From Mobula hypostoma (lineage: Eukaryota), in assembly GCF_963921235.1 (NCBI RefSeq), contig NC_086106.1:35650001-35714000 (forward strand): a stretch of DNA of 64,000 nt, given 5' to 3'. Shown here one piece after another: positions 987 to 52,527 of the stretch (positions are counted from its first letter, which is position 1; each line of letters opens with the position of its first letter). The notes under the pieces were generated by a model that made no database searches, was not told the DNA's origin, and saw only the letters and a program-made list of their open reading frames with translations. Both the position numbers and the translations under genes were made by a program.

Positions 987-1056
987 ATGCACTTTCCACC
1001 TCAAGGCCTAGTGTATTCAATATACTACACTACCCTTGCTGTTGTCGCTGTACCAG
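987..1056 (+). CDS. GPCR gene A, coding exon 1 (MHFPPQGLVYSIYYTTLAVVAVP, phase 1)
   Basis: ATG at 987, 70 nt, ends CCAG|gtatcg. Joins in frame to the acceptor at 2428 to give ...VP-A-NLVAIVILSRG, completing TM1. The same exon is found upstream of all four paralogs. Confidence 0.9.
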
Positions 1057-2427
1057 GTATCGTCGTCAGTTTTCTGATCTAATTGCATGTTAACCTTCAG
1101 CTAATTTCTTTAGCACAGCCATCAGTCGAAATATTTCGTTTACCTCAAATTTAGTGCTTTCGGGGGTGATGCCGCACAAATATTTCCGAATTATGTCTGA
1201 TTTTGTTGGTTACGTCATGAAGAGGTTTTAGGAAAGTGTCTCGAAGTTGGTGGAACATTAAATGAACTTAGCAGTGAAGAACGTGTATAAGACGGCTCCA
1301 AGAAATATCATTTCTTCGCACTTCCATCACAGGGCCGAGATGTTTACAACCGGCAATTATTCCAATGATCTCTGCCTTCTCAGTGGCAGCAAGACAAGCA
1401 CAAAGCTGCGTTCGGCAAAATATGGCGCTGATATACTGCCCATCAGTTTAAAACAAATCGCACTGTTAATTTGAAGACTATTCTTCAGCCTGCTCAGATG
1501 ATGATACCAGAAAATGGGCGATGTAATCCTGCCCCCCTGGCTGTCTCGGAATTTCATAGAGCATGAAAAATGAAAGATATTATTACATTGTTCTAGTGAC
1601 GAGCATATCCATCAATCAAATCTTATAAAACGGGATCTGTTTTTTAAATAACGTAAACATTCAGTAGAAAACTATATATAGTAAGATATCAGATTTGTAC
1701 AATTCCTAATTGAATTCTTCACTGCTCAGACTCTACCTCCGATTCTTCGAAAGCTTTCAAGATAAACTCTCGAATATATGTTGGTAAATTAGACCTCTGA
1801 CTGATTCAAAAAGTAAATAGCAAATCAAGTATAATCTAGATCACTTGAAGTGATCTAACTCGATGAAATTAACGTAAAAACAAAGGATGTTTGATTTAGT
1901 ATCCCAAAGATCGGGCAATTTTTCCCGTTAACTGAAACCTCATTTGCCTGGATTACAAGCCCACAATTAAAAGGAAAGGTGACGATCGTGTTAGCATACA
2001 CTAGAAGGAGGTTTGAGTGCAGGACTAACGGTACCTTGTTCAAATTATGCGGGACTTCCCTAGGACCTAAACTGGAGTGTCGTTCATCGTTTTGAATCGT
2101 ATGAAACATATATCGATGTATTTCTGTATATTAAGAATACAGAGACCAGTAGGAAAATTACAAAAATGTAGGTAATAACCAATGATTTCGACTGCGTAGA
2201 CTCAAGGGTTGAAGCGGCTCATATTAGATATGAAGTTCCCTATCAGATCGTTGGTTTAGACATAGGTGTTCTCTATCTAATCTATTTCACTTAATTTTGT
2301 GCGTTTTCATATTAACACGAGCGTTTCACCTGTTAGAGTTCTAAAACATTCGTATTTTTTGTCTATATACTGCTGCTGCAGACAGTCTTTTTCATAAACT
2401 TTCTGTCTCCCTTTCTCTTCCCTAAAG

Positions 2428-3329
2428 CTAATTTAGTGGCGATTGTGATCCTGTCCCGCGGGAAGTGTGGCCTCTCTAAATGCATCACTCGCTACTTGGT
2501 CTCCATGGCAGTGACCGATTTGCTCCTCATTATTACCGCTGTGATTATCAACCGCATTTGTGGCATTTATTTCCCAGGAAGTTTCCTCTCCATCACCCCA
2601 GTGTGTAGTGTCATCGTCGCACTAACCTATGCAGCCAGGGTCAGTTCTGTTTGGTTAACTGTCGCTTTCACCTTTGACCGTTTCGTAGTTATTTGTTGCC
2701 AGAAGCTGAAGTCGAAGTACTGTACCAACAAAACAGCAGCTGTGGTCATAGGAACTGTCTGTGGACTCAGTTGTTTTATTAATATTCCATGGTACTTCAT
2801 TCATGAACCCAGCTATATAATTAACAATGTACCATGGTATTGCAAACTGAAGGATATCCGTTTTACTTCTCCATTGTGGGGTGCTTATGATTGGTTCGAC
2901 CACCTTTTAACCCCTTGCTTCCCATTCCTTTTAATTCTTCTGCTCAACGTTCTCACCGTCAGACACATTTTAGAAGCTAGCAGAGCCCGGAAGAGACTCC
3001 TGGTCCAGAAAAGTGGAAACAATCATAGTGACGCTGAGACGGAGAGCAGGAGGAAATCTATCATTTTACTCTTCGCCGTCTCAGGCAGTTTTATACTGTT
3101 GTGGATGACGTATCTTTTACAGTTCTTATATGAGAGAATTTCTAATGACTATAAAGTCAACGGTTACAGTGATCCAAAGTTTATTTTTATCGAAACGGCC
3201 AACATGCTCCAACTGTTAAGTTGCTGCACAAACACATTTATCTATGCAGTCACTCAGAGCAAATTCAGGGAGCAGTTAAGAAGCACAGCACAATATCCAG
3301 TAAACTTAATAGCGAAATGTATGAAATAA
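2428..3329 (+). CDS. GPCR gene A, coding exon 2; class A 7TM receptor, GPR139/GPR142-like (323 aa spliced)
   Basis: Pyrimidine tract followed by aaag|CT acceptor. Seven hydrophobic segments, AVTDL (D2.50), FDRF, ECL2 Cys, TM7 NTFIY followed by helix 8 (KFREQL). Open frame to TAA at 3329. Confidence 0.92.
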
Positions 3330-3899
3330 TGGATGGAGCAAATTCAACCATGAATATGCAACATTGTTTTAAATAGAATTCGTCTTGTGTTAAATGTGAA
3401 CCAGAAACATTTATCCTCGATGACAAAACCAGTTCTGCAAATACAGGGACAACAAAAATTTTAAAACAGAATTGTCGTGAAATGTGCAGGTTGGATATAC
3501 CTCTGTTGGCTTTCAAAATGTAGCAATGTAATGACAGGAAACTTCCCTACATATGTCGGACGAATATTACATTTTACTAATAGATGACCTCTTTCATACC
3601 ACAGAAGCTGTGAATGATAGTTCAAGGCTGGAGGGAGCTGCGAAGTGAATAAAAAGGCAGTAAATGCCATAAAGCATGTGGTCAACGTTTTTTGTGGGAT
3701 AAGAAATAGCTGGAGTAACTCACTGCAACTATTCATCTCTGTCCGCGTTTCCCAGCTCCTTACAAATCGGTACAAATGTATCACGCAGTCCTGCTTGCAA
3801 TTGCTATTACTACCTCTTCCATCATAAAATATCGTTATATATCCTCGTTGGAACAAAGAGAAATTTAGACAGAGACGTAACGTAAAGATTTTCACTTCT

Positions 3900-4147
3900 C
3901 ATGTACATGAAGGGAGGCAGGGGAGGGAACGTCGACTCAGACCATGAGAGGCCAGCATCGGGCATTTTCATGACTTACAAAGTGCAGATTGGAAGTCTGT
4001 GTGGGGCGCCACTCCTCGCACAGACACTAGAGCAATGTGTGGTTAAGTGCCTTGCTCAAGGACACACGCACGCTACCACAGCTGAGGCTCGAACTAGCGA
4101 GCTTCAGATCACTAGACAAACGCCTTAACCACTTGGCCACGTGACAA
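3900..4147 (-). mobile_element. tRNA-derived SINE (V-SINE/Mermaid-like core)
   Basis: Minus strand shows A box TGGCCAAGTGG, B box GTTCGAGCC, then GTGTCCTTGAGCAAGGCACTTAACC core. Confidence 0.75.
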
Positions 4148-5400: not shown

Positions 5401-5419
5401 AATGTCGATAGATTGGTAC

Positions 5420-11599: not shown

Positions 11600-14500
11600 G
11601 CTTTGGCTCAACGGGCGTAGGCAGTAACGAGACGAGGTAGGTCTACCTGTGTTAATTGCGGAAAGGAAGCAGTATGTGTGTGAGGCCGGTTTTCTGTGCT
11701 TAGTGTCAGATGTGGGAGGTCCTGGAGTCTCCCAGCCTCCTGGACTGCCATATCTGCACATGGTGCGTCGAACTGCAGCTCCTAAGGGACCGAGTTAGGG
11801 AACTGTAAATATAGCTCGATGACCTTCGTCTGGTCAGGGAGAACGAGGAGGTGATAGAAAGGAGTTATAGGCAGGTGGTCACACCGGGGCCAAGGGAAAC
11901 ATGCAAGTGGGTCAGAGTCAGGAGAGGGAAGGTGAAGGGTCAGGTACTGGAGAATACCCCTGTGGCTGTACCCCTGAACAATAAGTACTCCTGTTTGAGT
12001 ACTGTTGGGGGGGGGGGGGGCAGCCTACCTGGGTGAAGCAACAGTGGCCGTGCCTCTGGCACAGAGTCCGGCCCTGTGGCTCAGAAGGATAGGGAATGCA
12101 AGATAAGGGCAGTAGTGATAGGGAACTCTATAGTTAGAGGGTCAGACAGGTAATTCTGTGGACGCAGCAAAGAAACTCTGGTGGTAGTTTGCCCCCCAGG
12201 TGCCAGGGTCCGGGATGTTTCAGATCGCGTCCAAGATACCTTGCAGTGGGAGGGAGAAGAGCCAGAGGTCGTGGTACATATTGGTACCAACGACATAGGT
12301 AGGAAAAGGGAAGAAATCCTGAAAAAAGGACTACAGGGAGTTAGGAAGGAAGTTGAGAAGCAGAACCACAAAAGTATTAATATCAGAATTACTGCCTGTA
12401 CCACGCGACAGTGAGAATAGGAATAGAATGAGGTGGAGGATAAATGCGTGGCTGAGGGATTGGAGCAGGGGGCAGAGATTCAGATTTCTGGATCATTGGG
12501 ACCTCTTTGGGGCCTGTACAAAAAGGACGGGTTGCACATGAATCCCGGAGGGACCAATATCCTGGCGGAGAGGTTTGCTAAGGCTACTGGGGAGAGTTTA
12601 AACTAGAATTGTTGTGGGGTGGGAACCGAACTGAAGAGACTGCGGAAGAGGCAGTTGGCTCACATAAAGCTGGGAGACAATGTGTGATGGAGGATAGGCA
12701 GTTGATAGAGAAGGGGCGCGGTCAGATGGTCAGATGGTTTGATATGGGTCTATTTTAAGGCAAGGAGCGTTGTGAACAAAGGGGATGTGCTTAGAGCGTA
12801 AATTAGTACTTGGTGCTATGGTGTGGTTGAGAGACTTGGATGGTTCAGGGACAGGAATTGTTACTTCAAGTGCCGGGTTTTAGGTGCTTCAAAAAGGATA
12901 TGGAGGGAGTCAAAAGAGGTGGGGGCGTGGCACTGTTGATCAGAGATAGTGTCACGGCTGCTGAAAAGGCGGACGTCATGGAGAGATTGTCTATTGAGTC
13001 TCTGTGAGTGGAGGTTAGGAACAGGAAGGGGTCAGTAACGTTACTGGGTGCTTTTCATAGGCCGCCCAATAGTAACAGGGATATCGAGGAGCAGATAGGG
13101 AAACAGATCCTGGAAAGGTGTAATAATAACAGAGTTGTCGTGATGGGGGATTTTAATTGCCCAAATATCGATTGGCGTCTCCCTAGAGCAAGGGGTTTAG
13201 ATGGCATGGAGTTTGTTATGTATGTTCTGGAAGGTTTCAATATATAGATAAGCCTACAAGAGGAGAGACTGTACTTGATTTGGTATTGGGAATTGAACCT
13301 GGTCAGGTGACACAGTGGGAGAGCATTTTGGAGATAATGATCGCAATTCTATCTCCTTTACAATGGCATTGGAAAGAGATACGAACAGACAAGTTAAAAA
13401 AACGTTTAATTGGAGTAAGGGGAATTATGAGGCTACCAGGCAGGAAATTGGAAGGTTAAATTGGGAAAAGAAGTTCTCAGGGAAAAGTACGCAAAAATGT
13501 GACAAATGTTCAGGGGATATTTGTGTCGAGTTATGCACAGGAAGCTTCCAATGAGACAGGGAAGTTATGGCAGGGTACAGGAACCGTGGTGTACAAACGC
13601 AGTAATAAACCTAGTCAAGAAGAAAAGAAAAGCTTACATAAGGTTCAGAGAGTTAGGTAATGTAGGTATCTAGAAGATTATAAGGCTAACAGGATGGAGC
13701 TTAAAAAGGAAATTCGGAGAACCAGAAGGGGCCATGAGAAGGCCTTGACGGGCAGGATTAAGTAAAACCCCAAGGCATTCTACAAGTATGTGAAGAGCAA
13801 GAGGATAAGACATGAAAGAATAAGACTTATCAAGTGTGACAGTGGGGAAGAGTGCATGGAATCGGAGGAAACAGCAGGGTACTTAATGAATACTTCACTT
13901 CAGTATTCATTATGGAATAGGATTTTGGTGATTGTCGTGCAGACTTGAAGAGATTCAGCATGTAGATATTAAGAAAGAAGATGTGATGGAGCTTTTGGAA
14001 AGCATCAAGTTAGATAAGTCGTCGGGACCGGATGAGAGGTACCCCGGTCTACTGTGGGAGGCGAGCGAAGAGATTGCTGAGCCTCTGGCGATGATCCTTG
14101 AATCATCAATGGGGACGGGAGAGGTTCAGGAGGATTGGAGGGTTGCGGATGGTGTTCCTTTATTCAAGAAAGGGAGTAGAGATAGCCCAGGAAATTATAG
14201 GCCAGTGAGTCTGACTTCAGTGTTTGGTATGTTGATGGAAAAGATCCTGAGAGGCAGGATTTATGAACATTTGGAAAGGTACAATATGATTAGGAATACT
14301 CAGCGTGGCTTTGTCAAGGGCAGGTCGTGCCTTACGAGCTTGATTGAATTTTTTGAGGGCAGGTTGTGCCTTACGAGCTTGATTCACTAAACACATTGAT
14401 AAAGGAAGAGCAGTAGATGTAATGTTTATGGATTTCAGCAAGGCATTTGATAAGGTACCCCATGCAAGGGTTATTGAGAAAGTAATGAGGCATGGGATCC

Positions 14501-17239: not shown

Positions 17240-17710
17240 TCTCTTACCAGCTCTCTACTGTGGAGAGCATTTTAAATAGTTGCATCACTGCCTCGTATGG
17301 AGCTTCCGGTGAACATGATTGCAAAAACTCAAAGCTTTTTGACTCAGGCAATTCCATCTCGGACATAACGTTCCCCACATTGAGAAGATCTTCATGAGGT
17401 AGTGCCTCAGGAACCGGCATCTACTGTTGAGTATCCTCACCATCGGGGACAAGCCAGTTGGTTGTCGATAAGGCTTCTAGGAGAGAGGTCCAGGAGCATG
17501 AAGACCCAGACACTATGTTAAGAACACATCTTCCCCACCACACTGAGATTTATGAACGGTTCTTGGACCCACGAGCGCCACATTGTTATTCTTTTTTTGA
17601 AATATTGACTTAGTTTTGCGACTTATTGTGATTTTTATTTCTGTCGATATACTGCTGCCCCAAAACAATACTTTTTACGACATACGCCAGAGTTAATAAT
17701 TCTGATACTG
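17240..17710 (+). mobile_element. Rex1/Babar-like LINE 3' fragment
   Basis: VESILNSCITASYG motif typical of the Rex1 C-terminus. Only the tail survives at the paralogous site in unit A (~235-275). Confidence 0.6.
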
Positions 17711-18418: not shown

Positions 18419-20439
18419 ATGCACTCTCCACCCCAAGGCCTAGTGTATTCAATATACTACACTACCCTTGTTGTTGTCGCTGTACCAGTAGATTTTCTTA
18501 TCTAATTGCATGTTATCCGTTATCGAATTTCTTTTGCTCAGACATCACCTGAAATACATCGTTCACCTCAAATTTTGTGCTCTCGGGGGTGAACCCGCTC
18601 AAATCTTTCTGAATGATGCCGGATTTCGTCGGCTTAGAAATGAGTGGGTTTTAGGAAAGTGAATGGAAACTAGTGGAATATTATATGAATTTAACTGTAA
18701 GGAATATGAGTGAAAGCTTTCGAGGAAATATCATTTGTTAACACTTCCATCACAAGGACGAGATTTTTACAACCGGCAACAATTCAACTGAGCTGCGCCT
18801 TTTCAGCGGCAGCAAGACAAGTGTCAAACTGCATTTGGCGAAATATGGCGCTGAAATACTGCCCATCGTTTTAAAACAAATCGCACCTTTAAAATGAAGG
18901 TTATGTCTCAGCTTGCTCAGATGATGCTACCGGATAACGGGCGATGTAAGCGTGCCTTCCTTGCTCTCTCTGAATTTCACATTTCACGAAAAATTATAGG
19001 CAGATAATTAAACTGTCCTAACGACGAGGATACCTATCAGTCAGATGAAATAAAAGGGATTTTTTTTTTTTACTGACGTAAAATCCTGTGGAAAACTATA
19101 CTAGGATCTCAGATTTGTGTAATTCCTAATTGAATTTTCACTGCTCAACTTCTAACTCCGATTCTTCAAAAGCTTTCAAGATAAACTTATATGTCTGTAA
19201 ATGACATCTCTGACCGATTCAAAAGGTAAACAGAAAGTAAAATATAATCTAGATAAATTTGGAGAGATCTATTTCGGTGCAAAATAAAACCTTAAAAACA
19301 AAGCACGTTTGTTTTATCGTCCCGAGGTTTGGCATGTTTTACTGTTAATTGGAACTTTGTTATCATAGAATTCAAGCCATGTCGACCCATCAGGTTGAAA
19401 GGCGACGAATGTGTTAGCGTACATTATAAGGTGGTTTGAGTGCAGTGCGAACGGTGTTTTGTTCAAATTATGCAGGGCCGCCCTGTAACCTTAACGAGAG
19501 TGATGTTCAGAGTTTTGGCTCCCCTGCCTAATAAAACAATAGCTCCAAAAAGGAAGTGGAGCATAACGCGTAAACCTAGGCTAACAGAATAAGGCTGTCT
19601 CTCTGAGGTTTTAAGGTGTAGTATGCTATTGAGTTCAGCCGGGTAGGTCGAGGAGTTTCGAACCAAAGAGTTTGTCTCAAAAATCATGAGACCATTTATA
19701 ACTGATATGGAAATAAAAATGTTCAATTAACTTCGTTGAACATGCAGACTCTGTCACTGAATCGTCTGAAACATATATCGATATGTTTCTGTATATTAGT
19801 AATAGAGGCAAGCAGGAAAATGACGAAAAGTTAGATCATAAGCTCTGATTTCGACTGCAAAGACTCAAGGGTTGAAGCGGCTTATATTACTTATGATTTT
19901 TCCAATGAGATCGTTGATTTATGTATACGCGTTCTCTAACCTAACCAATTTCACTTAAACTTGTGGGGTATCATATTATCATGAACGTTTCTCGTGTCAG
20001 AGTTCTGAAATATATGTATTTCCTGTCTATGTATTGCTGCTGTCGACAGTCTATTTCATAAACTTTCTGTCTTCCTTTCTCCTCCCTCAAGCTAATTTAG
20101 TGGTGATTCTGATTCTCTCCCGCGGGAAGTGTGGCCTCTCTAAATGCATCACTCGCTACTTGGTCTCCATGGCAGTAACGGATTTGCTCCTCATTATTAC
20201 CGCAGTGATTATCAACCGCATTTGTGGTATTTATTTCCCAGGAAGTTTCCTCTCCATCACCCCAGTGTGTAGTGCCATTATTGCAATAACCTATGCAGCC
20301 AGGGTCAGTTCTGATTGGTTAACGGTCGCTTTTACTTTTGACCGTTTTGTAGTTGTTTCCAGAAGCTGAAGTCAAAGTATTGTACCGACAAAACAGCAAA
20401 TGTGGTCATAGAAACTGTCTGTGGACTCAGTGGTTTCAT
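18419..20439 (+). pseudogene. GPCR gene B pseudogene (exon 1 18419-18488; exon 2 remnant 20092-20439)
   Basis: Exon 1 MHSPPQGLVYSIYYTTLVVVAVP with the splice donor altered by a small deletion (ccag-tagat vs ccag-gtatc). 4-nt deletion after DRF gives a frameshift and TGA at 20367-20369. Truncated in TM4 by fusion to Gypsy integrase. Confidence 0.92.
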
Positions 20440-22999
20440 CTGATTGTATTTCCTTAGGCAGCCCAAAATAAGTGAAGAAGTTTATAAGAGCTTTTGTCAC
20501 AGTCTTAGCTGTTATATTCCTAAGATGGACCGCTTCTGGAAACCTAGATGCTGTGCACATAATAGTTAATAAATATTGATGTCCAGTTTTAGTTTTTGGC
20601 AAAGGACATACACAGTCTACAATGATTTTGAAAACGGCTCACCAAATACAGGAATTGGTTGCAGTGGAGCCACTGGAGTAACCTGATTAGGTTTACCAAC
20701 AATTTGACATGCATGACACGTTCTGCAAAATGTCGCCACATCTTGACTTCAACTAGGCCAATAAAAATGTTTCGAATCTTTGTTCATAGTTTTCTTTACC
20801 CCTAAATGACCACGCAAAGGAATACTATGAGCCATAGTCAAAATCTCATTTCGGTAAATTTCAGGAACGACAACCTGATGATTAACTTCCCATTCCTCAC
20901 TAGCAGGAATTGTAGGCGATCTCCACTTTCTCATTAATACCCACCTTTCAAAATAATTACTAACTGGTATTTTTTTTCAATTTCACTATCTGGAGGAGCT
21001 TGTTCTTTTAATTTAACTATCTCAGGATCCCCACCCTGCTCTGCTATTATCTCCTTCCGAGATAAAGACAAATCTTCCTGATCAGACTTACCATCAAAAT
21101 CCTAATCAAATAAGGTAGGTAAGGAAGTTTCTGATACATCCTCAAAATTCGAATCTTGATTTGAACTGTCATGGGTAAAACGTCATCCTTTACATCAGCC
21201 TTTTTAGCTACAGCTCTTGTTACAACACAGGAAGAATCTGTGTTAGAATCCCTCTGTGGTTCCTCAGAATTTGAACTTATTGTCAAATGCACTTCAGGAA
21301 AAACTTGTCTACCTGCTAAATCATTCCCTAACAAAAGACAGACATCATTCACAGGTAAACGGGATTGTAATCCTACTTTAACAAACCCTGTAACTAATCC
21401 TGACCTTAAATTTACTCTATGTAAATATACTGGCATAAGGGCACTCCCTACTCCTCTTATTTAATTTACATCACCAATGACAGACTCAACACTAAACCTT
21501 AACACACTGTCTAATATTAGTGATTGCGAAGCTCCGGTATCTCCAAGTATCCTGATTGGTACTGCATTGGATCCTTCTTTCAAGGCTACAAATCCTTCTG
21601 TTATAAAAGCTTCATATCCCTTCTTAACTTGGTCAGACTCTGACACATCTTTATTAATATTTTCTAACCCCTGTGGTTTTACAGGTTTTCCAATATGCTG
21701 CACACAAGCATCTGCGACCACTTATTTCTCTTTCCGCTTCAACTGGAAGCAATTAGCCACTACATGTGCAGGTTTCTTACAAGAATTACAAATAATACCA
21801 AAAATGTCTTTCCTTCATCCTTACTTTTCTCATCAACTTCAGATTTAATGTCTGATTTACCTGACTCTCTGTGCTAGTTTTCCTTTTAAAAATTTTACCT
21901 GGAGAAAATTTATTCTTGTGAATTAAAACATACTCATCAGCCAAGTTAGCAATCTCCTGCAATGTAGCAATGTTCCGTTCATTTAGGTATGCTCTCACTT
22001 CAACAGGAATGCTTCTTTTAAATTTCTCCTGCAATATCAGTTCTTTTAATTTATTATACTCCTCATTCACATTTTTAGCGGAAACCCAAATCTCAAAACA
22101 CACAGAGTTCTCATAGGCAAATTCCACATATGTTTTTTCCACCGATTTCTTTAAACTTCTAAATCTTTCTCTATACGCTTCCGGAACCATCTCGTATGCC
22201 TTTAATATATTCTGCTTAACAATATCATAATGCAGTGCTTGTTCAGCATTTAAAGCTGTATAAACTTGTTGTGCCTTGCCTTTAATTACACTTTGGAACA
22301 TCATTGGCCATTGGTCTTTCGGCCACTTTAAACTCAGAGCAACTATTTCGAAATGTTGGAAATATGCGTACACATCAGCTTTATTAAATGGAGGAGCCAA
22401 AACAACCTCACGACTAGCAATAAACTGTTTTGTAGAACCAGAAGGCTGACTCCCGAACTTTACTTTCTGCATCTCTAACTCGAATTTCCTCTGGTTATCA
22501 GCATCTCTTTCCGCAAACTGCCTTTCTCTAAGGGCATCCTTTTCTTCAAATTCCCTTTTTTTATTAGCGTCTCTTTTGGCCATTTCCGCTTTAAATGTTT
22601 CAAACTTTAACTGTTCAAGATGCAACTGCATTTCCAGATTACTCAGTGGAAACTTATCTAACACCTCCTGATCAAACAATTCCAAATTAATATAATGTTC
22701 AGCAATTTTTCTTTGTATGAAAGCCTTGGTGGAATTTCTCGTAATCCCTTTAATATCCAACTTCTTAGCAATCTCCAATACCACAGGTTTTCCCGCATTC
22801 TCTAAAGATCCCGAGTCAGGCGCCTTCAAAAAATCGTCAATATCCATTGTTGCCGAATACAACACACACACCAATCAAACCAAAAAAAAAAATCGGGTAT
22901 TCCCATTTTCCAAATCAAAATGGCAATTACCAGCACTTAAACTCAAAATCGGAACATATCCTGGCCGACTCCCCCCCCCCGCCCCCCCCCCACAAATTA
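20438..22999 (-). mobile_element. Gmr1-type Gypsy LTR retrotransposon, unit 1 (gag, protease, 5' part of integrase), truncated
   Basis: gag 22874-21786 (GKAQQVY...EAYRERFR), protease GDTGASQS, integrase HHCC region and MCTASRFPEA...EIQSD. Degenerate tRNA-Pro-like PBS next to the LTR. Confidence 0.9.
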
Positions 23000-39131: not shown

Positions 39132-40042
39132 TCAGTAAACCATTAACTTCCAGATTAAGCGGAACGGATATTTTGTCGCATCTTTTAACTCCTCTCTGAA
39201 TTTCCTCTGAGTGCCTGCATAGATGCACGTGTTAGTGCAACAACTCCAAAGCTGAAGCATATATCCACTTTCCTGCAGTATGAATCTAGGGTCGTTAAAA
39301 TCTGATCCTGCAAAATAGCTACTGTTTGTAAGTCGCACATCCAACAGATTTATAACATAAGTCAGCCATAAAAGGATAAAAGTCCCCGAAATGGACAACA
39401 ATAAAACGATGGACTTCCTCCGGTTCTCTATTTCTGGGTCACTCTGTTCGGTTCCTTTGTTACGCACTTGTAACCTCCTCCGGGCTCTGTTGGCCGCTAG
39501 GATATGCCTGACTGTGAGACCGTTGAGCAGCAGGATCAGAACGAAGGGCAGACATGGGGTTAAAAATTTATCTAGCCAGTCAAATGCTGCCCATCCAACT
39601 GAAGTGTAAAATACGGATCTTATGCTGCAAAACCAGGCTACACTGTTTAATATATACAATGGTTCATACATGAAGTAACAGGGAACGTTCCTAACCAAAC
39701 TAAAGACACAGACGGTAACGATCACCACAACTGATGTTTTCTCGTTGCAATATTTGTTTTTCAGTTTTACGCAACAAATGACTATGTATCGATCTAACGT
39801 GAAAGCGACAGTCAAGCAGACGGAGCTGTCCCTGGCTGCATACGTTATGACCGCTGTAACACTACAACCGGTAGTATGGGTCAGAAAACTTAGTTGGAAG
39901 TAAATACCACGAATGCGATTTAATATCACCGCAGAGATCACGACTAGTAGATGAGCCACAGCCATGGACACCAGGTACCGAGTAATGCATCTGGACAGAC
40001 CGCACCTTCCTCGGGAGAGAATCGCAATCGCCACTAAGTTAG
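39132..40042 (-). CDS. GPCR gene C, coding exon 2 (GPR139/GPR142-like; 326 aa spliced)
   Basis: Acceptor tcttctttgccttgcag|CT, 7TM, LDRY, NTCIY, open frame. Carries D2.50H and other radical substitutions. Confidence 0.88.
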
Positions 40043-40753
40043 CTGCAAGGCAAAGAAGACACAATTAGTAAAGTAATAATAAAGTGGGAACGCCGTTGAT
40101 CGAAATTGAGCATGAGTGTTGCGTTCTCGCTGTCTACGCAAGCCAAGGCAGAACTACGTGGAGGGCAAGCTGGTGTTCATGCAGCAGATTCCCCCTGATC
40201 ACGTAGCTGATCAATCTTAAGGAACTGCTGAGTATGGTTTGGTACCAGCAGCTTCACGGTAACTGCCAGCCAGTGTTCAACGCATCGGAGGACAGGCTTA
40301 GGTCATACAACTCTAGAATTTTCCTCGGGGTTTACGCCCGAAAGTGTCCATATGAGTGTGTATAGCTGCAAGGCTGCGGAGGTCTGTGATTAGACATTTC
40401 ATTCTCATAGATGTGCAGCTAACCATCTGCCCGAAACGACCGGTTTTACGGCGCCAAAATCGTGTCTTTGTCTCTACTCCTGTCAGCAGAAACGGTTTTG
40501 CTGGGTAGTAGCTAAGCCGCAAGTGAAAGACAGGGGCTTGACTTGGTTGTCACCGGCTATTTGGGACACACGCTGTTCGGAGCATTTAATAGGTAGTGGG
40601 AGCTTTCCACACTACGTCGCCGGCTCTGATACTTCAGTGAACTCACAAAGCGACAATGATAATACACGCAGATAAATTCTTCCTCGTAGAATTGATAAAA
40701 CCCGTAAAACATGAAAAACTAATTTATAATCCTTGGGTAAACCAGTGTCTTAC

Positions 40754-40823
40754 CTGGAACCGCAAACGCGGCGAAGATGAGATAGTATATTGCAAATGCA
40801 AGTCCGGTGACTGGGTTGTGCAT
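40754..40823 (-). CDS. GPCR gene C, coding exon 1 (MHNPVTGLAFAIYYLIFAAFAVP, phase 1)
   Basis: 70 nt, ATG at 40823, donor CCAG|gtaaga. TATA-like TATATATAG at ~40897-40907. Confidence 0.9.
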
Positions 40824-41498
40824 TTCAAAAAATGCGCAAAGGACGAGGAGACCAGTTCTATCTGTTGTAGCTGACGTTAAACTGATCTGTGGTGTATCTA
40901 TATATATTAACTCCACTGAGACAAGTGATCGTGACAATGAGATTAAGAAACAAATTAATGCAGTAATTTCCACCGTCATCGAATATTGTCGTAATGTACA
41001 ACTATACATAATTGTTAAACACGGCTTAAAATCCGTACTCGCGCAGTTTGAAGCCATTCATTACAACCTAATTTCATAGTGATGACTTCATCCAAATTCG
41101 AGAAAATAATATTTCCTTCTGACTAAGATGATTTGTGGCAGTGTCCAGTAGCTGGCGAATCATGATGAATCTTTGTGTACAGGATTTCTGGTTGTTGTGT
41201 GCGAAAATATATTAACATGTTTCGCAGGTCGTGAAAATATCAGCCTTTAGTAGGGACTATTCACAAGGATACAGCATAATTCCAGAATTTCTATCTGGTT
41301 AATCCCAGAAGAATTTCAACATTTCATTAAAATCAGAGGATATGTGAACTTCCATCCTTAAGGACGAAACTACTTCAGCTGGGTGTCAATCTTCTCTCTG
41401 GTACGATTTGTTTATGTCCGAATTTGGTAATATGTCCCAGCGTTACATAAAATCGATGAGAAGGAAAAGAAAATCTTCAGATGCCGGAAATCCAAGTA

Positions 41499-41705
41499 CC
41501 ACACACAAAATACTGGAGGAACTCAGCAGGCCAGGTAGCTTCAATGGAAAAGAATAAACAGTCGACGGTTTTGGCCGAGATTAGAATAGGAATAGACTCA
41601 TAAACGGTCCTGATGAAAAGTCTCGAACTGAAAGGTCGACTGTTTACTATTTTCTAATGATGTTGCCTAGACTGCTGAGTTCTTCCAGAATTTTGTGGGT
41701 GTTGT
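41499..41705. mobile_element. Palindromic Penelope-pLTR-derived (MER6-like) element with hammerhead core
   Basis: Inverted arms acacacaaaatactggaggaactcagcag... / ...ctgctgagttcttccagaattttgtgggt. CGGTC-CTGATGA-n13-GAAA-GG-TC-GACTG at 41605-41642. Confidence 0.75.
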
Positions 41706-42139
41706 TAAAATCAATGCAGGCTACATTTAGAGACAGTTAAATAACTTTATTGTGATACCATACGTACCTGGTTTGGCATAGGTCAGCGATTCAAACGTAA
41801 CATCAAACATCTGGGCATCTTTTAGTTTTCCACATCATGTTTAAAATGCATATTTGATAACTAATCTAAACATAATATCCGCTATTATATCGATATTTGA
41901 CTACCCCTAATGACCATGATTGTATAGGGCGTAATAACCTGTCTCCATGCCCTATGAATCCTGGACTGCCGTTGATAACAATATGATATTTGACTGAGTA
42001 TGCCATCAAGTTGCACAGCCCACCAAAGCCAATAAGAAACAAGAGGGAGAAATCTGACAGGTGCGAGTTGAAAGACCAGCTGATTAGAATTCTGAACCGG
42101 CATGCATCAGTGAGGAAGGGAAAACGTAATTGTAGAAAA

Positions 42140-42350
42140 TTCAGGAAGACCACTCTCCGTCTAGAGAAGCAATACCTTATTTTTCATCTGGGTTGTCTCC
42201 AGCCTCATGATATATACATCGATTTCTCCAAAGTCTGGTAATTTCCCCCACCCCCTCTTTCTTTTTTCAGTTCCCCACTCTGGCCCCCATCTTACCTCTT
42301 TTCATCTCCTCACCTGCCTATCACTTCACTGCCCCACCACCATCCCCTGC
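42140..42350 (+). mobile_element. Penelope-like element fragment (GIY-YIG C-terminus + pyrimidine-rich 3' region)
   Basis: RLEKQYLIFHLGCLQPHDIYIDFS matches the E..LIFRLG.LQP.G.N.DFS end of PLE ORFs. Confidence 0.7.
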
Positions 42351-42665
42351 CCCTCCTGTGGAAGTTTTAAGAATCAGAAATAAAACATGGTCCTTGAGTA
42401 ATATAAAGAAATCACCAAAGAAGAGAAACGGGGATTGAGGAAGCCAACAGTAGCTGTGAAATATCCGAGGTGAACAGGATTAAGGAAATTGCCAAGGAAT
42501 GTTGTGCTTACAGTACATTATAACTTGAGGTCAGGACTACTCAGTGACAAGGGCAGGTCTAAATGCAAGCCTGGAAACAGAGGAAGTGTGTTGCGGGGCA
42601 GAAAAATGCGTATTTTGCATCACGGTTCAACAAGGAGAAGGACTTCGAGGACAGTGAAATAAGTG

Positions 42666-43055
42666 TTTTGCCTATTGCCTGTGACAGGGGCCGGGGTCGA
42701 AGCGCTCGGCAGAGATGGTGCTCGGTGCTTGGTGTCGGAGAGCTGGTCGGAGGCTCGCAGTTTTCAGACGGACTCAGAGTCGGACTGTGGTCGGATGCTT
42801 CCGATATGCTGCAACGGCAAGTTGGCGGTGCTGGTGATTCACCGTCTGCGTGAGATGATGGGACTTTAGAGCGGTATTGCTTTGCACTGTTGTAACTATG
42901 TGTTACAATCATGTGTTTTTCGTTAGTTTTTAAGTCGGTTTGTCATGTGTTTCTGTGATATCATTTTGGAAAAACATTGTATCAGTTCTTAATGCATGCA
43001 TTACTAAATGACAATAAAAGAGGACTGCGTGTACTCATAATCCAATCTAATCTAT
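42666..43055 (+). mobile_element. (AATCT)n-tailed non-autonomous retroelement, 5'-truncated copy
   Basis: High similarity to 48358-49005 (-) and 54123-54720 (+). AATAAA followed by an AATCT tail. Confidence 0.85.
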
Positions 43056-43614
43056 CCTCCATAGGTCTATTGTGTTTCACTTGATCCCAATCCAGGAAGT
43101 TTGGTATCTGATCCAAGCTCCTTTTTTTCTCGACTAGTGTTACGATATCCCTTGCCATCCAGGGTTCCATTTCCCATCAGCTTTACATTTTACTTTATCA
43201 TGGACATCTATGCCTTGCTATCTAGCGTTTAAAAACATACAATTTACCAGAGGTCCCTGTGACTGAAAACAGCTTAATCTGATTAAATCTTTCCAGCTCC
43301 TGTCCAATAGCATCAAAATTCACCTTCCCCAATTCATAACTTTAATATACAAAAGAGATCTCCCCTTTTCATTAAGTATTTTAACAATGACAGAACTATG
43401 GTCACTGATTCAAACTGCCCCCCTACTGTGAATTTAGTTACTGGCCCTTCCTTATTTTCAAGGAGTAGATCAATGTTGTCTGCCACAGCTCTATTTTTAT
43501 ACTGCCTGAATGAATGAATGAATTTATTTAAGTCTTACATCCATCCCACAACCTGAAGGAGTAAAAATCTTTGCGTTATGACTCGGTCGCAACGCACAGA
43601 CATGTAAATTTTAT

Positions 43615-43831
43615 CCCTATCTGTAAAATCATCTCTCATTGCTCCCCATCTGTACTTCTGTTCGACGGGAGTTCAGTGACACCATCTCTCACTGCTCCCC
43701 ATCTGTAATTTCTTCCACTCTTCAACTTTTCGGAGTCCTGACGAAGGATCTTGGCCCGAAAAGTCGACTGTACCTCTTCCTAGAGATGCTGCCTGGCCTG
43801 CTGCGTTCACCAGCAACTTTTATGTGTGATG
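43615..43831 (+). mobile_element. Penelope pLTR fragment with hammerhead-like core and 13-bp TSD
   Basis: Flanked by ATGTAAATTTTAT (43602-43614 and 43832-43844). AGTC-CTGACGA-aggatcttggccc-GAAA-AG-TC-GACT at 43734-43769. Confidence 0.75.
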
Positions 43832-45499
43832 ATGTAAATTTTATAATGGCTTATAGAAAGATGATGTCCCGTGGCCTTTTCGTCCTGGCTTTAATGCGGT
43901 GGTACCGTTTGCCAGACAGAAGCAGCTGATAAAATAATATGGTTGTGGTGACTGGTGTCTCCGATGATCATCCAGGCATTTTCTATGCGTCTGCCGCTGT
44001 AAATGTCGTCAACGTAGGGAAGTGCAAGTTCACAGATTCGCTGGGAAGTCCGTACCACTCTTTGTAGCGCCCACTAGACGAGGTTGTTGCAGTCCCCGTA
44101 CCAGGTGGTGATAGAGCCAGTCAGGATGCTCTAAATGCTGCCCCTATAGAAGGTCTTGAGGATTTGGGGGCTCATACCGTAGGAAACATTTTTAAACACA
44201 CTAAATAATTCCCACTCCATCTAAACATTTATCACAATGGCAACCCCAGTCAATCCTAGAAATCAACTATGGTGAGAACTCTACCAGTCTTAAATTCTCC
44301 CCATCTCCCTGAAGTTGTATTCCTCAAATTCCTGAGGACTTTTTCAGACCCTATGGTACAATGCAAATGAAGTAACCATCCCTTTCTTGTTTCTCAGATC
44401 CATCCAGAAATCCTCACCAGATTATCTTTCAATAATATCATCTCTAATTACTAGTATGATGTTCCTCTTAATAAAAAAAACACAACATCACCTCCTCCTT
44501 TCTCCACGTCTCTAAATTTCTTTTAGCACGCTTATTGTGCAAGATTAAGCTGCTGCTCCTAACCATCCCTTAGCCATGCAGCTCTCCATGTCCTAAATTA
44601 ACCTATCTTATGCACATAAAATACTTTAGACAAAAATATAGATGGATTGATTAGGAAGTTTTACACATGGCAGAAAACTATTGTAGTAGAGGATTATGAA
44701 TAGGATTGTTGAAGGATTCAACAGGATATACTGTAGATCAGAATGAGATACGGGTAGAGGAATAATAGGTGAAGTTTACTCCGGACAAATATGAGTCGCT
44801 TTACTTTTGGAAGTCAAACATCTAAGGAAATATTACTGTTAATGTCTGGGTCCTTTGCGGCATTTAAATACAGGTGGATCATGGGGAGCATGTCCATTGC
44901 TCCCTACGTAAAGACTGGATATGGCATGTTTGACTTCACGGGTTAGGGCACTGAGTACAAAATCAGGACAGTTCCACAGCTTTGTAAAGACCACTTTCGG
45001 GGCATTGTTTGATGTTCGAGATGTTGTATTGCAGGAATGAAATAGAATTATTATAGTGCTAGCATAAGAGGTTCACAATGATAATGCATAAACTGGAGAG
45101 TATTTGATATCACGGCAAGATGGGCAACGATAGAATTTAATTACACCACTGATCATTTTATAAAATTCTTCAGGTCATCCTTCAGCTCCTTTATTCCAGG
45201 GAAAAACGTCCCAGCTTATCCAGCCTCTCCTTATAAATCAAGTCTTCCAGTTCTGGCAACTGTATTGTGAGTCTTTATTGCTACTTCATGTCTATTTAAC
45301 CACATCTTTTCTCATAGTATAGCAATGAGAAATTCACACAATATTTCAGATATAGTCCCACAAACCTCTTGCGCAGCTGAAACATTCCTTCCCATCTATT
45401 GTATTGAATGCACCATTTGATGAAAGTCAACATGCCGTATGCCTTATTCACTATCATTTTCGTACATCATAAGAACATAATACATAGGAGCAGCAGGAG

Positions 45500-50054: not shown

Positions 50055-50965
50055 GCATATATAATATTTACATGTTAAATTATGAGCATTATAAATTCCA
50101 AGTCATACACGCCGAAACTACACATTGAACGAATATTTTGCACTGTTCTATACGACGTTCCCAATTTCCGATGTTTTAGTTCTCTGTGCAGCTATCGGTA
50201 TCATGTTTCCCAAAGAATATACCGAACATTTCAGAGCCCTCCCACACCTGCATTCCCCATGCTGCTCGATCAAATAGCTTGATGAGCTGCAGAATGTTTA
50301 CCTCGTAACAACAAATACTGTCGCTACTAGACGAACCTTAAGCTCCACCGAGCTATTCGATTGAACGGCAGAAGTGATTTTCAGTCTACCGCATCACTTG
50401 TTCCCTACTGTGCGGAAAAGCCTTTTTTTTTACATTTGTTCGTCTATCGAATTTGTTAATCTGCGCTTAATGCCTCTTTCCTATTTTTCTTCAGTTTTCA
50501 GTTTATATTTGCAACATTAGGACGTAGATGGAACTAAAATCTAAAAGGCACCCGATTACGAGTTTCGATATCGATCTAAACTGATATTTACATTTACATG
50601 GTTAACCGTACCATTTGGTGCTACAGATCCCGTAATTCGTAAAGCCACAGCAGTCTGCTTTGCTTAGTTGTTACTTTAATCTAATCTCGTTCACACTACC
50701 GTTAAATTCGAATAGTAGTAGCTTTCAATAATTGACAATGAAACGAACAGATCTATTCTTAAATACTGATCAAATGAATATCAGATTTTATCAATTTATT
50801 TCGTATGGATACATGATGTATTGTGCAGCACCCAGTGTGAGAAACAATGAACTAGATTAAACGGAATGTTACAAATGCCGAGACGTTGAGAATTAACTTT
50901 CAGATTGATGAAACAAAAAGACACAGGATAGAAACTTTGAAGGATTTTCGCCACTGAATACAATT

Positions 50966-51876
50966 TCAGTAATCTATTAATTTCCAGATTAATCGGAAAG
51001 GATATTTTGTCGCATCTTTTAACTCCTCTCTGAATTTCCTCTGAGTGCCTGCATAGATGCACGTGTTAGTGCAACAGCTCCAAAGCTGAAGCATATATCC
51101 ACTTTCCTGCAGTATGAATCTAGGGTCGTTAAAATCTGATCCTGCAAAATAGCTACTGCTTGCAAATCGCACATACAACAGATTTATAACATAAGTCAGC
51201 CACAAAAGGATAAAAGTCCCCGAAATGGACAACAATAAAACGATGGACTTCCTCCGGTTCTCTATTTCTGGGTCACTCTGTTCGGTTCCTTTGTTACGCA
51301 CTTGTAACCTCCTCCGGGCTCTGTTGGCCGCTAGGATATGCCTGACTGTGAGACCGTTGAGCAGCAGGATCAGAACGAAGGGCACACATGGGGTTAATGT
51401 TCGATCCAGCCAGTCAAACGCTGCCCAGCCAACAGAAGTGTAAAACACGGATCTTATGCTGCAAAACCAGGGCACACCATTTAATACATACAATGGTTCA
51501 TACATGAAGTAACAGGGAACGTTCCTAACCAAACTAAAGACACAGACGGTAACGATCACCACAACCGATGTTTTCTCGTTGCAGTATTTGCTTTTCAGTT
51601 TTGCGCAACAAATGACTATGTATCGATCTAACGTGAAAGCGACAGTCAACCAGACGGAGCTGTCCCTGGCTGCATAGGTTATGATGGCAGTAACACTACA
51701 ACCGGTAGTATGGGTCAGAAAACTTAGCGGGAAGTAAATACCACGAATGCGATTTAATATCACCGCCGTGATCACGACCAGCAGATCCGCCACTGCCATG
51801 GACACCAGATACCGAGTAATGCATCTGGACAGACTGCACCTTCCTCGGGAAAGAATCACAATCGCCACTAAATTAG
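50966..51876 (-). CDS. GPCR gene D, coding exon 2 (GPR139/GPR142-like; 326 aa spliced)
   Basis: Acceptor tcttctctgccttgcag|CT; AVADL, SVWLT, LDRY, NTCIY; open frame. Confidence 0.92.
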
Positions 51877-52457
51877 CTGCAAGGCAGAGAAGACACAGTT
51901 AGTACAGTGATAATACAGCAGGCACGACGTTGATTGGGGCTGACTGTGGATGCTACGTTCTAGCTGTCCACGCAAGCCATTGCGCAAGAAATGGCATAAT
52001 AATATGGAGAGCATCTGTTTTTCGTACAGCAGGTTCGCCGCTTCGCGCAGCGGATGAATCCAAAGGTAGCGGAGGTCTGAGATCACAGGTTTCCTTCTGG
52101 TAGATGAGCAGCCAAATATGGCTAACATGCCCCACCTGCCCGAAATCATTGGTCTTAAGGCGCCAATAATGCGCCACTTCCCCTGCTCCTGTCCTTAGAA
52201 ACGGTTCCGCCGAGTTTAGTAGCTAAGTACACATCAAAGACAGGAGCTTAACTTGGTTGCCAGAGGCTTTTGGACACGCACATTTTTGGGAGCATTTAAT
52301 AGGTAGTGGGAGCTTAACGCAGGACATCACGGCTCTGACACCCCAAGGAAATCACAAAACCTCCGTGATTATACATGCAGATGAAACTCGTACAATTGAT
52401 ACATCCCGTAAACCATGAATGAATAATTTTAAACCCTTGGATAAATCAGTATCTTAC

Positions 52458-52527
52458 CCGGAACCGCAAACGCAGCGAAGAGAGGATAGTATATTGCAAA
52501 TACAGGTCCGGTGACAGGGTTGTGCAT
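52458..52527 (-). CDS. GPCR gene D, coding exon 1 (MHNPVTGPVFAIYYPLFAAFAVP, phase 1)
   Basis: 70 nt, ATG at 52527, donor CCGG|gtaaga. TATAAAT on the minus strand at ~52598-52604. Confidence 0.9.

What the first reader, a model, noticed from the sequence alone, without database searches (positions are those of the whole stretch)
987..52527. Birth-and-death cluster of orphan GPR139-like receptors: candidate uncharacterised chemosensory or ligand-diverse receptor repertoire
Seen in sequence: four paralogous 7TM genes in 52 kb, two clearly diverged subfamilies (A/B and C/D) in convergent orientation, one dead copy and one with radical changes, all sharing one exon structure. Established: GPR139 and GPR142 are low-copy receptors for aromatic amino acids (Trp/Phe) in bony vertebrates, and cartilaginous fishes have very few OR genes. 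Inference: tandem expansion, pseudogenisation and minimal N-termini are the genomic signature of sensory or immune receptor repertoires. This may therefore be a lineage-specific expanded amino-acid/peptide sensing family normally hidden under the automatic label 'probable GPR139'.
Basis: partly seen in the sequence, partly recalled or inferred. Interest (0 to 1): 0.85.

Follow-up and report, generated by a model that had tools for sequence, protein, structure and literature searches.

The report
Expanded GPR139-like receptor cluster in ray
Four neighbouring copies (two sound, one damaged, one dead) of an orphan cell-surface receptor gene in a devil ray belong to an apparently undescribed family that has multiplied to dozens of genes per genome in sharks and rays and varies most in its ligand pocket, which makes it a plausible but untested new sensory receptor repertoire.

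Summary
The window (Mobula hypostoma) holds four two-exon class A GPCR genes. A (+) and D (-) are intact. B (+) is a pseudogene: splice donor lost, 4-bp frameshift, exon 2 cut off at a retroelement junction. C (-) has an open frame but has lost the invariant TM2 Asp (D2.50H) and W3.41.

A/B and C/D are segmental duplicates from two old subfamilies that sharks and batoids share. The family is large: 1,245 database relatives, and 49 distinct Heterodontus proteins in the top 120 hits alone. All named close hits come from elasmobranchs.

GPR139 is the nearest solved receptor, but only distantly. The family is not orthologous to the conserved GPR139-like gene that sharks also carry (AU test p = 6.6e-5). 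It has replaced GPR139's carboxylate-binding R6x51. Activation motifs are nearly invariant, while predicted pocket positions are the most variable.

The birth-and-death expansion and ligand diversification are therefore supported. The amino-acid-sensing idea is not. Chemosensory or immune expression could not be tested here. I found no paper describing the expansion. The scan's first readers flagged the same family in at least eight other notes on this genome. Interest is moderately high.

The parts
987..1056 (+). Copy A, exon 1 (N-terminus and most of TM1; 23 codons + 1 nt; GT donor)
2428..3329 (+). Copy A, exon 2 (rest of TM1 to the stop). Intact 323-aa receptor with no departures at 40 near-invariant family columns
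18419..18488 (+). Copy B, exon 1. Open, but the splice donor is destroyed (CAG|TAGA)
20092..20439 (+). Copy B, exon 2 remnant. It has a 4-bp deletion just after the DRF motif that shifts the frame and brings in a stop. Homology to A ends at 20439. B is a pseudogene
20435..22874 (-). Truncated copy of a Gypsy-type retroelement (SCAN-like gag; domain order gag-INT-RT-RNaseH) that abuts the broken end of B. A second, longer copy runs from 23469 to about 31817 and is interrupted by LINE sequences
39132..40042 (-). Copy C, exon 2. The frame is open, but it carries D54H (D2.50), W99C (W3.41), P73Q and Y258D
40754..40823 (-). Copy C, homologous exon 1 (intact, GTAAGA donor). RefSeq's model does not use it
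41766..41810 (-). Alternative first exon used by RefSeq's 317-aa model of C (P0285, 'uncharacterized protein'). It encodes 14 non-hydrophobic residues, so that product would lack TM1
50966..51876 (-). Copy D, exon 2. Intact
52458..52527 (-). Copy D, exon 1. The spliced product is identical to RefSeq protein P0001 (326 aa)
278..2779 (+). Segmental duplication unit of A, paired with 17704-20439 (B). About 76-86% nucleotide identity, including upstream sequence and the intron
50059..54104 (-). Segmental duplication unit of D, paired with 37782-43602 (C). About 72-86% nucleotide identity, including flanks and the intron

Best explanation
[quoted passage not shown] The family belongs to the GPR139 superfamily and evolves by birth and death.

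Shown: the four gene models and their states. Segmental duplication produced A/B and C/D. Intact copies keep the signalling core: N1.50, D2.50, W3.41, D/R3.49-50, the TM3-ECL2 cysteines, P5.50, W6.48 and N7.49-x-x-x-Y7.53. ICL1 is almost frozen. Variation concentrates in the extracellular halves of the helices and at canonical pocket positions. The duplicates are under purifying selection. The family has many members across sharks and rays.

Inferred: each intact paralogue is a working receptor that binds a small or short-peptide ligand in the transmembrane pocket. The 7-residue N-terminus leaves little else to bind with, although ECL2 forms a beta-hairpin lid as in peptide receptors. All paralogues signal through a common transducer, and they differ in ligand specificity. 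The family would then act as a multi-ligand detection repertoire, most likely chemosensory. The tissue of expression is unknown.

Within the window, A and D are functional and B is dead. C is a recently compromised or functionally shifted copy.

The confidence given is for the ligand-diverse repertoire reading as a whole. The anatomy and evolutionary history alone I hold at about 0.9. A specifically chemosensory role I hold at about 0.33.
For: Gene models and lesions. Class A identity: Pfam 7tm_1 at E 1e-18 to 1e-22; AlphaFold2 7TM model with pLDDT 80, pTM 0.78, TM1 starting at residue 8 and an ECL2 hairpin. Family size and range: 1,245 hits at E<=1e-5, and every named hit in the top 120 is an elasmobranch, including 49 Heterodontus and 19 Heptranchias proteins; 116 clusters at 50% identity with E<=1e-30; M. 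hypostoma members on this chromosome and on another. Constraint: dN/dS is 0.24 for C/D and 0.27 for A/B; exon K is 0.06-0.08 against 0.23-0.32 for introns and flanks; D-type orthologues are 76-85% identical across rays and sharks. Diversification: extracellular helix halves carry 1.13 bits against 0.68 for intracellular halves (p=1.6e-5); 31 canonical pocket positions carry 1.89 bits against 1.30 for other TM positions (p=1.3e-4); positions equivalent to GPR139's ligand contacts (3x32, 5x43, 6x51, 7x38) are variable while activation motifs are at least 95% conserved. Superfamily link: GPR139 is the best solved match for the family profile, 1.3e-17 against 1.6e-12 for TRHR; all groups lack Pro7.50; the phase-1 intron before N1.50 is shared with the conserved sister clade.
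Against: There is no expression or ligand evidence of any kind. The family is rather conservative for a chemoreceptor family: mean pairwise identity is 55% in the sample, and subfamilies are stable across the shark-batoid split. The coding region contains an intron, whereas the classical vertebrate class A chemoreceptor families (OR, TAAR, V1R) are, from general knowledge, typically single-exon. A catshark study found no GPCRs among the 50 genes most specific to its 'brain & olfactory epithelium' library (PMC11979771); this is weak, because receptor transcripts are rare. Extra variability at the extracellular face and pocket is also expected for any GPCR family whose ligands differ, including endogenous peptide receptors. 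The alignment sample is biased towards relatives of copy D.
Confidence: 0.5

Rival explanations
1. These are receptors for endogenous neuropeptides or neuromodulators. The expansion tracks an expanded or diversified set of internal ligands, and the receptors work in brain or endocrine tissue, as GPR139 does in the habenula and hypothalamus. It is not a sensory system.
For: The nearest solved and predicted structures are peptide or neuromodulator receptors: GPR139, TRHR, NTSR1, GHSR, galanin, CCK and the sex-peptide receptor. ECL2 forms a beta-hairpin as in peptide receptors. Subfamilies are conserved between sharks and rays and under purifying selection, as expected for receptors with stable internal ligands.
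Against: Dozens of tandem paralogues per genome with pseudogenes and lineage-specific bursts, for example six Heterodontus copies in one subclade, is not the usual pattern for vertebrate neuropeptide receptors (general knowledge). The conserved single-copy sister gene shows what a stable receptor of this superfamily looks like. No co-expanded ligand family is known.
Confidence: 0.2
2. This is an immune or barrier 'sentinel' receptor repertoire, comparable to the formyl-peptide or chemokine receptor expansions. It would be expressed on leukocytes or epithelial cells and sense microbial or tissue-damage ligands.
For: Chemokine receptors, GPR15 and CXCR2 are among the next-best sequence and fold matches. 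Tandem birth-and-death evolution is also typical of immune receptor families (general knowledge). An unchecked scan note places another cluster of this family beside a TCR-beta V array.
Against: The similarity to chemokine receptors is no better than to many other class A receptors. I found no sequence signature specific to chemoattractant receptors, and there is no expression evidence. The TCR-adjacent note was not verified here.
Confidence: 0.15
3. The array is mostly genomic by-product. Segmental duplication in a retroelement-rich region has amplified a receptor gene, and the copies are drifting towards pseudogenes with little collective function.
For: One of the four copies is dead and another has lost D2.50 and W3.41. 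The intergenic space is full of LINE and Gypsy-type elements. RefSeq's models of D and of other paralogues show no UTRs or have odd spans.
Against: dN/dS is about 0.25 for both young pairs. Exons are much better conserved than introns and flanks. A shows no departures and D one at 40 near-invariant columns. Orthologues are kept across sharks and rays.
Confidence: 0.05

Closest known systems
GPR139 / GPR142 (vertebrate orphan class A receptors activated by L-Trp/L-Phe)
   Same: GPR139 is the best solved-structure sequence match for the family profile and for the family's relatives in bony vertebrates. Shared features: the TM1 'YY...P-A/S-N' motif, W3.41, W6.48, and a TM7 N-x-x-x-Y motif with no proline. 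The fold belongs to the same peptide-receptor-like group.
   Different: The match is only 67 bits with a profile and 27.6 bits with a single sequence. Foldseek alignments give about 20% identity. The carboxylate-binding R6x51 is replaced by Y/F/L/N in all but 6 of 177 sequences, and H5x43 is D, H or variable. The motif is DRF/DRY, where the GPR139-like outgroups have ERF/ERY. The N-terminus has 7 residues. There are dozens of copies per genome rather than one. True GPR139 and GPR142 could not be placed in the tree here.
Conserved 'coelacanth-type' GPR139-like gene next to TMEM183A (probably the GPR210A/B clades of PMC6504862)
   Same: It is the nearest conserved relative, at about 32% identity. 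It has the same two-exon structure, with a phase-1 intron in the codon before N1.50, and it also lacks Pro7.50.
   Different: It is an essentially single-copy orthogroup found from sharks to squamates, and it keeps R6x51. Sharks have their own orthologue of it (P0301, P0308). The expanded family falls outside that clade (100/99 support; AU p=6.6e-5). The equation with 'GPR210' rests on the paper's taxon lists only and was not verified by accession.
Salamander-only GPR139-like gene (P0218, P0273, P0276)
   Same: It is sister to the whole elasmobranch family in the careful tree (100/99).
   Different: In the clusters I looked up, it occurs only in three salamander species. It sits on a very long branch (1.46), it has N at 2.50 and K at 6x51, and its placement could be affected by long-branch attraction.
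Vertebrate class A chemosensory repertoires (OR, TAAR, V1R/ORA) and sensory or immune expansions such as MRGPR and FPR
   Same: Tandem arrays, pseudogenes, lineage-specific bursts, very short N-termini, a conserved intracellular face and a variable pocket.
   Different: There is no detectable specific sequence relationship to these families. The coding sequence contains an intron. Turnover is slower, with subfamilies shared by sharks and rays. Expression is unknown.

Membership tests
Class A (rhodopsin-like) GPCR | Seven-transmembrane fold and a match to the 7tm_1 profile | tested here: met
   Pfam PF00001 at E 1e-18 to 1e-22. AF2 model with seven helices plus helix 8, pLDDT 80.
Class A (rhodopsin-like) GPCR | Conserved microswitches: N1.50, D2.50, D/E-R-Y/F, the TM3-ECL2 disulfide cysteines, P5.50, W6.48 and NPxxY | tested here: met
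   All are at least 83% conserved across about 175 paralogues and present in A and D. Exception: 7.50 is Thr (NTxxY) rather than Pro in most sequences. C lacks D2.50.
GPR139/GPR142 subfamily | Clearly closest sequence relationship to GPR139/142 | tested here: inconclusive
   GPR139 is the top solved match, but by a modest margin: 67 against 50 bits with a profile, and level with CXCR4 using a single sequence. Structure searches do not separate it from other peptide-type receptors.
GPR139/GPR142 subfamily | Agonist-site residues F3x33, H5x43, W6x48, R6x51 and N7x38 (PMC5430874) | tested here: not met
   The family has Y (114/178), D/H/variable, W (147/178), Y/F/L/N (R in only 6/177), and N/Y/F at these positions. 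The bony-vertebrate and amphioxus outgroups keep R or K at 6x51.
GPR139/GPR142 subfamily | Low-copy, one-to-one orthologues across vertebrates | tested here: not met
   There are at least 49 distinct proteins in one shark species among the top 120 hits alone, and the family is not orthologous to the conserved GPR139-like gene.
GPR139/GPR142 subfamily | Shared intron position with GPR139 itself | not tested
   The intron position and phase are shared with the conserved coelacanth-type clade. The GPR139 gene structure could not be checked with these tools.
Conserved coelacanth-type ('GPR210'-like) orthogroup | Falls inside that clade in a phylogeny | tested here: not met
   The clade, including its shark members, has 100/99 support and excludes the expanded family. 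The AU test rejects joining the expanded family with the shark members (p=6.6e-5).
Chemosensory receptor repertoire (a functional kind, not a clade) | Large tandem multigene family with pseudogenes and lineage-specific gains | tested here: met
   In this window, one of the four copies is dead and one is damaged.
Chemosensory receptor repertoire (a functional kind, not a clade) | Variation focused on ligand-contact positions, with a conserved signalling face | tested here: met
   Pocket positions were assigned by generic numbering from motif anchors, not from a ligand-bound structure.
Chemosensory receptor repertoire (a functional kind, not a clade) | Sparse, receptor-exclusive expression in sensory cells, and activation by external chemicals | not testable with these tools
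   No expression data were reachable. The supplements of the catshark atlas paper are not held. No paper on these genes was found.

The most novel reading that the evidence does not exclude
This family is an unrecognised chemosensory receptor family of sharks and rays, expressed receptor by receptor in olfactory, oral or solitary chemosensory cells. If so, it would supply the receptor diversity that their very small OR, TAAR and V1R repertoires lack, and would be a further vertebrate chemoreceptor family that arose from a GPR139-type ancestor.
Probability: 0.33. Interest if true: 0.9.

Novelty: new variant of a known kind. Interest (0 to 1): 0.66.

Why it matters
Cartilaginous fishes are known for acute chemical senses, yet they have only a handful of OR, TAAR and V1R genes, and their noses rely mainly on V2Rs (PMC6368271, PMC10116579; listed). 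A class A receptor family with dozens of tandem genes per genome, a conserved signalling core and a diversified pocket is an obvious candidate for missing receptor diversity, whether chemosensory, somatosensory or immune. In public annotation it is hidden under one misleading automatic name.

The claim can be tested directly with existing elasmobranch RNA-seq and with standard deorphanisation assays. Even if the family turns out not to be sensory, it shows three things. The GPR139 superfamily has at least one more ancient jawed-vertebrate lineage than is currently named. 'Probable GPR139' labels in shark and ray genomes should not be read as GPR139 orthologues. And GPR139 pharmacology (Trp/Phe, R6x51) should not be transferred to these genes.

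Tried and rejected
1. I first read the 1-kb direct repeats at 20435-21478 and 28800-29829 as LTRs of an element inserted into B. Pfam domains and a longer alignment showed instead two partial copies of a minus-strand Gypsy-type element, the first itself truncated at 20435. B therefore ends at a rearrangement or deletion junction, not at a clean insertion. No remainder of B's exon 2 exists in the window.

2. Structure comparison (afdb_swissprot and pdb) does not separate GPR139 from GHSR, NTSR1, galanin, CCK or chemokine receptors. It is uninformative for subfamily assignment.

3. I looked for a promoter element shared by A/B and C/D in the 400 nt upstream of each ATG. The sequences align within pairs only, and I saw no convincing shared motif. 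A/B have CCAAT-like and TATA-like boxes, and C/D have a TATA-like run.

4. I tried to get chromosome coordinates and neighbours of other M. hypostoma paralogues. The assembly file is too large for that tool, so it returned no DNA or coordinates.

5. Expression evidence: the catshark atlas supplements are not held, and seven literature searches found nothing on these genes.

6. I did not place bona fide GPR139 or GPR142 in the tree.

7. NCBIfam gave no hit, as expected for a prokaryote-oriented library.

8. The hypothesis that the coelacanth, salamander and anchovy 'GPR139' proteins are true GPR139 orthologues is rejected: they score only 53-70 bits against human GPR139.

Full report
**Source and observation.**
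The spliced product of copy D is identical to RefSeq protein P0001, 'probable G-protein coupled receptor 139' of Mobula hypostoma. That protein lies on a 135.9-Mb chromosome of assembly GCA_963921235.1.

tblastn with the three long 7TM ORFs finds four copies in the window and no more. Mapping P0001 locates four homologous first exons, at 987, 18419, 40823 and 52527. These are exactly the limits of the finding.

All four copies share one structure: a 70-nt exon 1 (N-terminus plus most of TM1), a phase-1 intron in the Ala codon of the TM1 'P-A-N' motif, and an exon 2 of about 900 nt. Introns are 1371, 1603, 711 and 581 nt. A and B lie on the plus strand, C and D on the minus strand, so the two pairs converge.

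**State of each copy.**
- **A (323 aa)** is intact and departs at none of 40 near-invariant family columns.
- **D (326 aa)** is intact and departs at one of those columns, G38S.
- **B is a pseudogene three times over.** Its splice donor reads CAG|TAGA. A 4-bp deletion directly after the DRF motif shifts the frame into a stop. Its homology to A stops at 20439.
- **C has an open 326-aa frame but has damaged key residues.** The TM2 Asp (D2.50) is replaced by His; Asp occupies that column in 177 of 178 family rows, and the one His is C itself. W3.41 is replaced by Cys (W in 172/177). C also carries P73Q and Y258D.

At B's break I first inferred an LTR insertion and then corrected it. The repeat is a unit of at least 1.6 kb from two partial minus-strand copies of a Gypsy-type element. 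That element has a SCAN-like gag and the order gag-INT-RT-RNaseH. The copy next to B is itself truncated at 20435. The break is therefore a rearrangement or deletion junction, and the 3' half of B is absent from the window.

RefSeq models C as an 'uncharacterized protein' of 317 aa (P0285). That model uses a different first exon at 41810-41766, which would leave out TM1.

**History of the duplicates.**
A/B (278-2779 against 17704-20439) and C/D (50059-54104 against 37782-43602) are segmental duplicates that include introns and flanks. dN/dS is 0.24 for C/D (dS 0.15) and 0.27 for A/B (dS 0.17).

Exons are much more alike (K 0.06-0.08) than introns and flanks (K 0.23-0.32). Even dS is only about half the non-coding divergence. 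That points to constraint on the exons, and probably to some exon-limited gene conversion.

In both trees D pairs with a M. birostris protein (P0284, 98% identical) and C pairs with another (P0002). The C/D duplication is therefore older than the split of the two Mobula species. P0002 keeps D2.50, W3.41 and P73, so C's damaging changes are recent and specific to the M. hypostoma lineage or to the sequenced individual.

**What the family is.**
The proteins are class A GPCRs (Pfam 7tm_1). An AlphaFold2 model built on 93 family members is confident (pLDDT 80, pTM 0.78). TM1 starts at residue 8, ECL2 forms a beta-hairpin, and there is a helix 8. D has no N-glycosylation sequon at all.

A search of 5.8 billion proteins gave 1,245 hits at E<=1e-5. 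Every named hit in the top 120 is an elasmobranch protein, nearly all called 'probable GPR139'. They include 49 distinct Heterodontus francisci proteins, 19 from Heptranchias, 8 from M. birostris and 5 from M. hypostoma.

An exhaustive search of 1.84 billion cluster representatives found 116 clusters at 50% identity with E<=1e-30. All the mid-distance representatives I looked up are sharks or batoids, and none is a chimaera. One is a M. hypostoma gene on a different chromosome.

First-stage notes of this scan flag the same kind of cluster in at least eight other notes on this genome, one of them about 1 Mb away on this chromosome. I did not verify those notes. Taken together, the refuting condition 'only a handful of copies' is not met.

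**Relationship to GPR139.**
With a single sequence, human GPR139 is the best solved match but is level with CXCR4 and rhodopsin (E about 1e-5). With the family profile it leads clearly but modestly: 1.3e-17 and 67 bits, against 1.6e-12 and 50 bits for the TRH receptor. That alignment shows specific shared features: the 'YY...PAN' TM1, W3.41, and a TM7 N-x-x-x-Y motif with no proline. Fold searches only place the model among peptide-type class A receptors.

The nearest non-elasmobranch relatives, at 26-34% identity, are proteins of salamanders, coelacanth, teleosts and amphioxus that carry the same automatic name. None of the three I tested (coelacanth, salamander, anchovy) is a true GPR139 orthologue: they score only 53-70 bits against human GPR139.

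Searching with the coelacanth protein showed that it belongs to a conserved, essentially single-copy orthogroup. This group is present in sharks (66% identity), sturgeon, bowfin, bichir, teleosts, amphibians, turtles and squamates. Gene predictors often fuse it to the neighbouring TMEM183A. It probably corresponds to the 'GPR210A/B' clades that a 2019 survey listed beside GPR139/142 (PMC6504862). That survey included no cartilaginous fish.

**Phylogeny.**
A tree built with a site-heterogeneous model recovers three things. The conserved clade, including its shark members, has 100/99 support. The elasmobranch family is monophyletic at 94/91. The elasmobranch family is sister to a salamander-only gene at 100/99.

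An AU test rejects joining the expanded family with the shark members of the conserved clade (delta lnL 80, p=6.6e-5). One caveat applies: I defined that group after seeing the tree.

The expanded lineage is therefore an old jawed-vertebrate paralogue, not an orthologue of any conserved receptor. Only its expansion is specific to elasmobranchs. Common ancestry with the conserved clade is supported by gene structure. A teleost locus has the same phase-1 intron in the codon before N1.50, and a bowfin locus breaks at the same residue. Within the family, the A-type and D-type subfamilies each contain both sharks and batoids, with local bursts such as six Heterodontus copies in the D-type clade.

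**How it probably works.**
Across about 175 paralogues, the activation and structural positions are 83-99% conserved: N1.50, D2.50, W3.41, D3.49, R3.50, P5.50, W6.48, N7.49 and Y7.53. So are the TM3-ECL2 cysteines. ICL1 is almost invariant at 0.29 bits. This argues for signalling-competent receptors that share one intracellular partner.

Variation is concentrated elsewhere. The extracellular helix halves carry 1.13 bits against 0.68 for the intracellular halves (p=1.6e-5). Thirty-one canonical pocket positions carry 1.89 bits against 1.30 for the other TM positions (p=1.3e-4).

The residues that mutagenesis identified as GPR139's agonist site are F3x33, H5x43, W6x48, R6x51 and N7x38 (PMC5430874). 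In this family the equivalents are:
- **3x33:** Y in most sequences.
- **5x43:** D, H or variable.
- **6x48:** W.
- **6x51:** Y, F, L or N.
- **7x38:** N, Y or F.

The Arg that binds the amino-acid carboxylate survives in only 6 of 177 family sequences. All seven bony-vertebrate and amphioxus outgroups keep R or K there.

I infer a repertoire of receptors for small or short-peptide ligands that bind in the TM pocket, with specificities that differ between paralogues and do not follow the GPR139 Trp/Phe mode. The inference that this is a chemosensory repertoire rests on the analogy of genomic behaviour and on the known poverty of OR, TAAR and V1R genes in cartilaginous fishes (PMC6368271, PMC10116579). 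I give it about one chance in three. Endogenous-ligand and immune roles remain open.

**Novelty and limits.**
Seven full-text searches found no paper describing this expansion. The genes are visible in public annotation, but only under a misleading name.

What I could not do:
- I could not obtain any expression data.
- I could not count the genes genome-wide.
- I could not place true GPR139 or GPR142 in the tree.
- I could not run codon site models, because coding DNA of the other species was not available.

Pocket positions were assigned by generic numbering from motif anchors, and the alignments are biased towards relatives of copy D. Species labels for the top 120 hits were transcribed by hand.

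**Verdict.**
- **Observation:** confirmed.
- **Interpretation:** partly supported. The expansion, birth-and-death evolution, pocket diversification and lack of one-to-one orthology hold. The amino-acid-sensing idea is not supported. A sensory or immune role is untested.
- **Classification:** a new, expanded variant within a known kind (a class A GPCR multigene family of the GPR139 superfamily), of moderately high interest.

Noticed in passing
window 20435-32600 (- strand): Two partial tandem copies of a Gypsy-type retroelement with integrase ahead of RT/RNaseH and a gag that matches the SCAN domain (ORF 21786-22874, PF02023, E 2.8e-8). From memory, this domain order resembles the Gmr1-like group of fish elements from which the vertebrate SCAN domain is thought to derive.
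   Followed up: partly
window 25540-27963 (+), and 30350-31582 (+): An uninterrupted 807-aa LINE ORF2 (endonuclease + RT) is nested inside the Gypsy-type element. A second fragment of the same LINE family, 97% identical over 300 nt, lies 3.4 kb away, which suggests a recently active LINE family. Further RT fragments lie at 13932-15171, 34215-35534, 57138-57527 and 61726-62100.
   Followed up: partly
window 41766-41810 (-) and 53303-53344 (-): RefSeq's model of copy C starts in a short upstream exon about 1 kb above the homologous exon 1. A 64%-similar stretch sits at the same relative position upstream of D. It may be a shared 5' (normally untranslated?) exon of these genes or an annotation artefact.
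   Followed up: no
window exons against introns of A/B and C/D: Synonymous divergence in the exons (dS 0.15-0.17) is only about half the intron and flank divergence (K 0.23-0.32). This holds even for the pseudogene B, which suggests exon-limited gene conversion among paralogues or a recent death of B.
   Followed up: partly
window 53030-53249; also 41500-41704 and 43732-43834: A sequence of about 220 nt matches its own reverse complement at 75% identity, with related copies upstream of C. It may be a palindromic or MITE-like repeat in the upstream regions of C and D.
   Followed up: no
M. hypostoma paralogue P0104 (not in the window): The annotated gene for this 321-aa paralogue spans 74.6 kb. 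The model probably joins exon 1 of one family member to exon 2 of another across a cluster, so annotated counts for this family are unreliable.
   Followed up: no
L002 1-1094 and 6001-6891 (bowfin): The conserved coelacanth-type GPR139-like gene lies directly downstream of TMEM183. NCBI models in a shark and a frog fuse the two genes ('transmembrane protein 183A isoform'), which indicates conserved synteny across jawed vertebrates.
   Followed up: partly
database hits P0256, P0261 and unnamed Logan/ENA proteins P0258-P0269: Amphioxus 'GPR139' proteins and a clade of unnamed 370-460-aa proteins from sequencing-run assemblies score closer to this family (84-89 bits) than human GPR139 does (27.6 bits). 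The GPR139-like superfamily is broader in chordates than its name suggests.
   Followed up: partly
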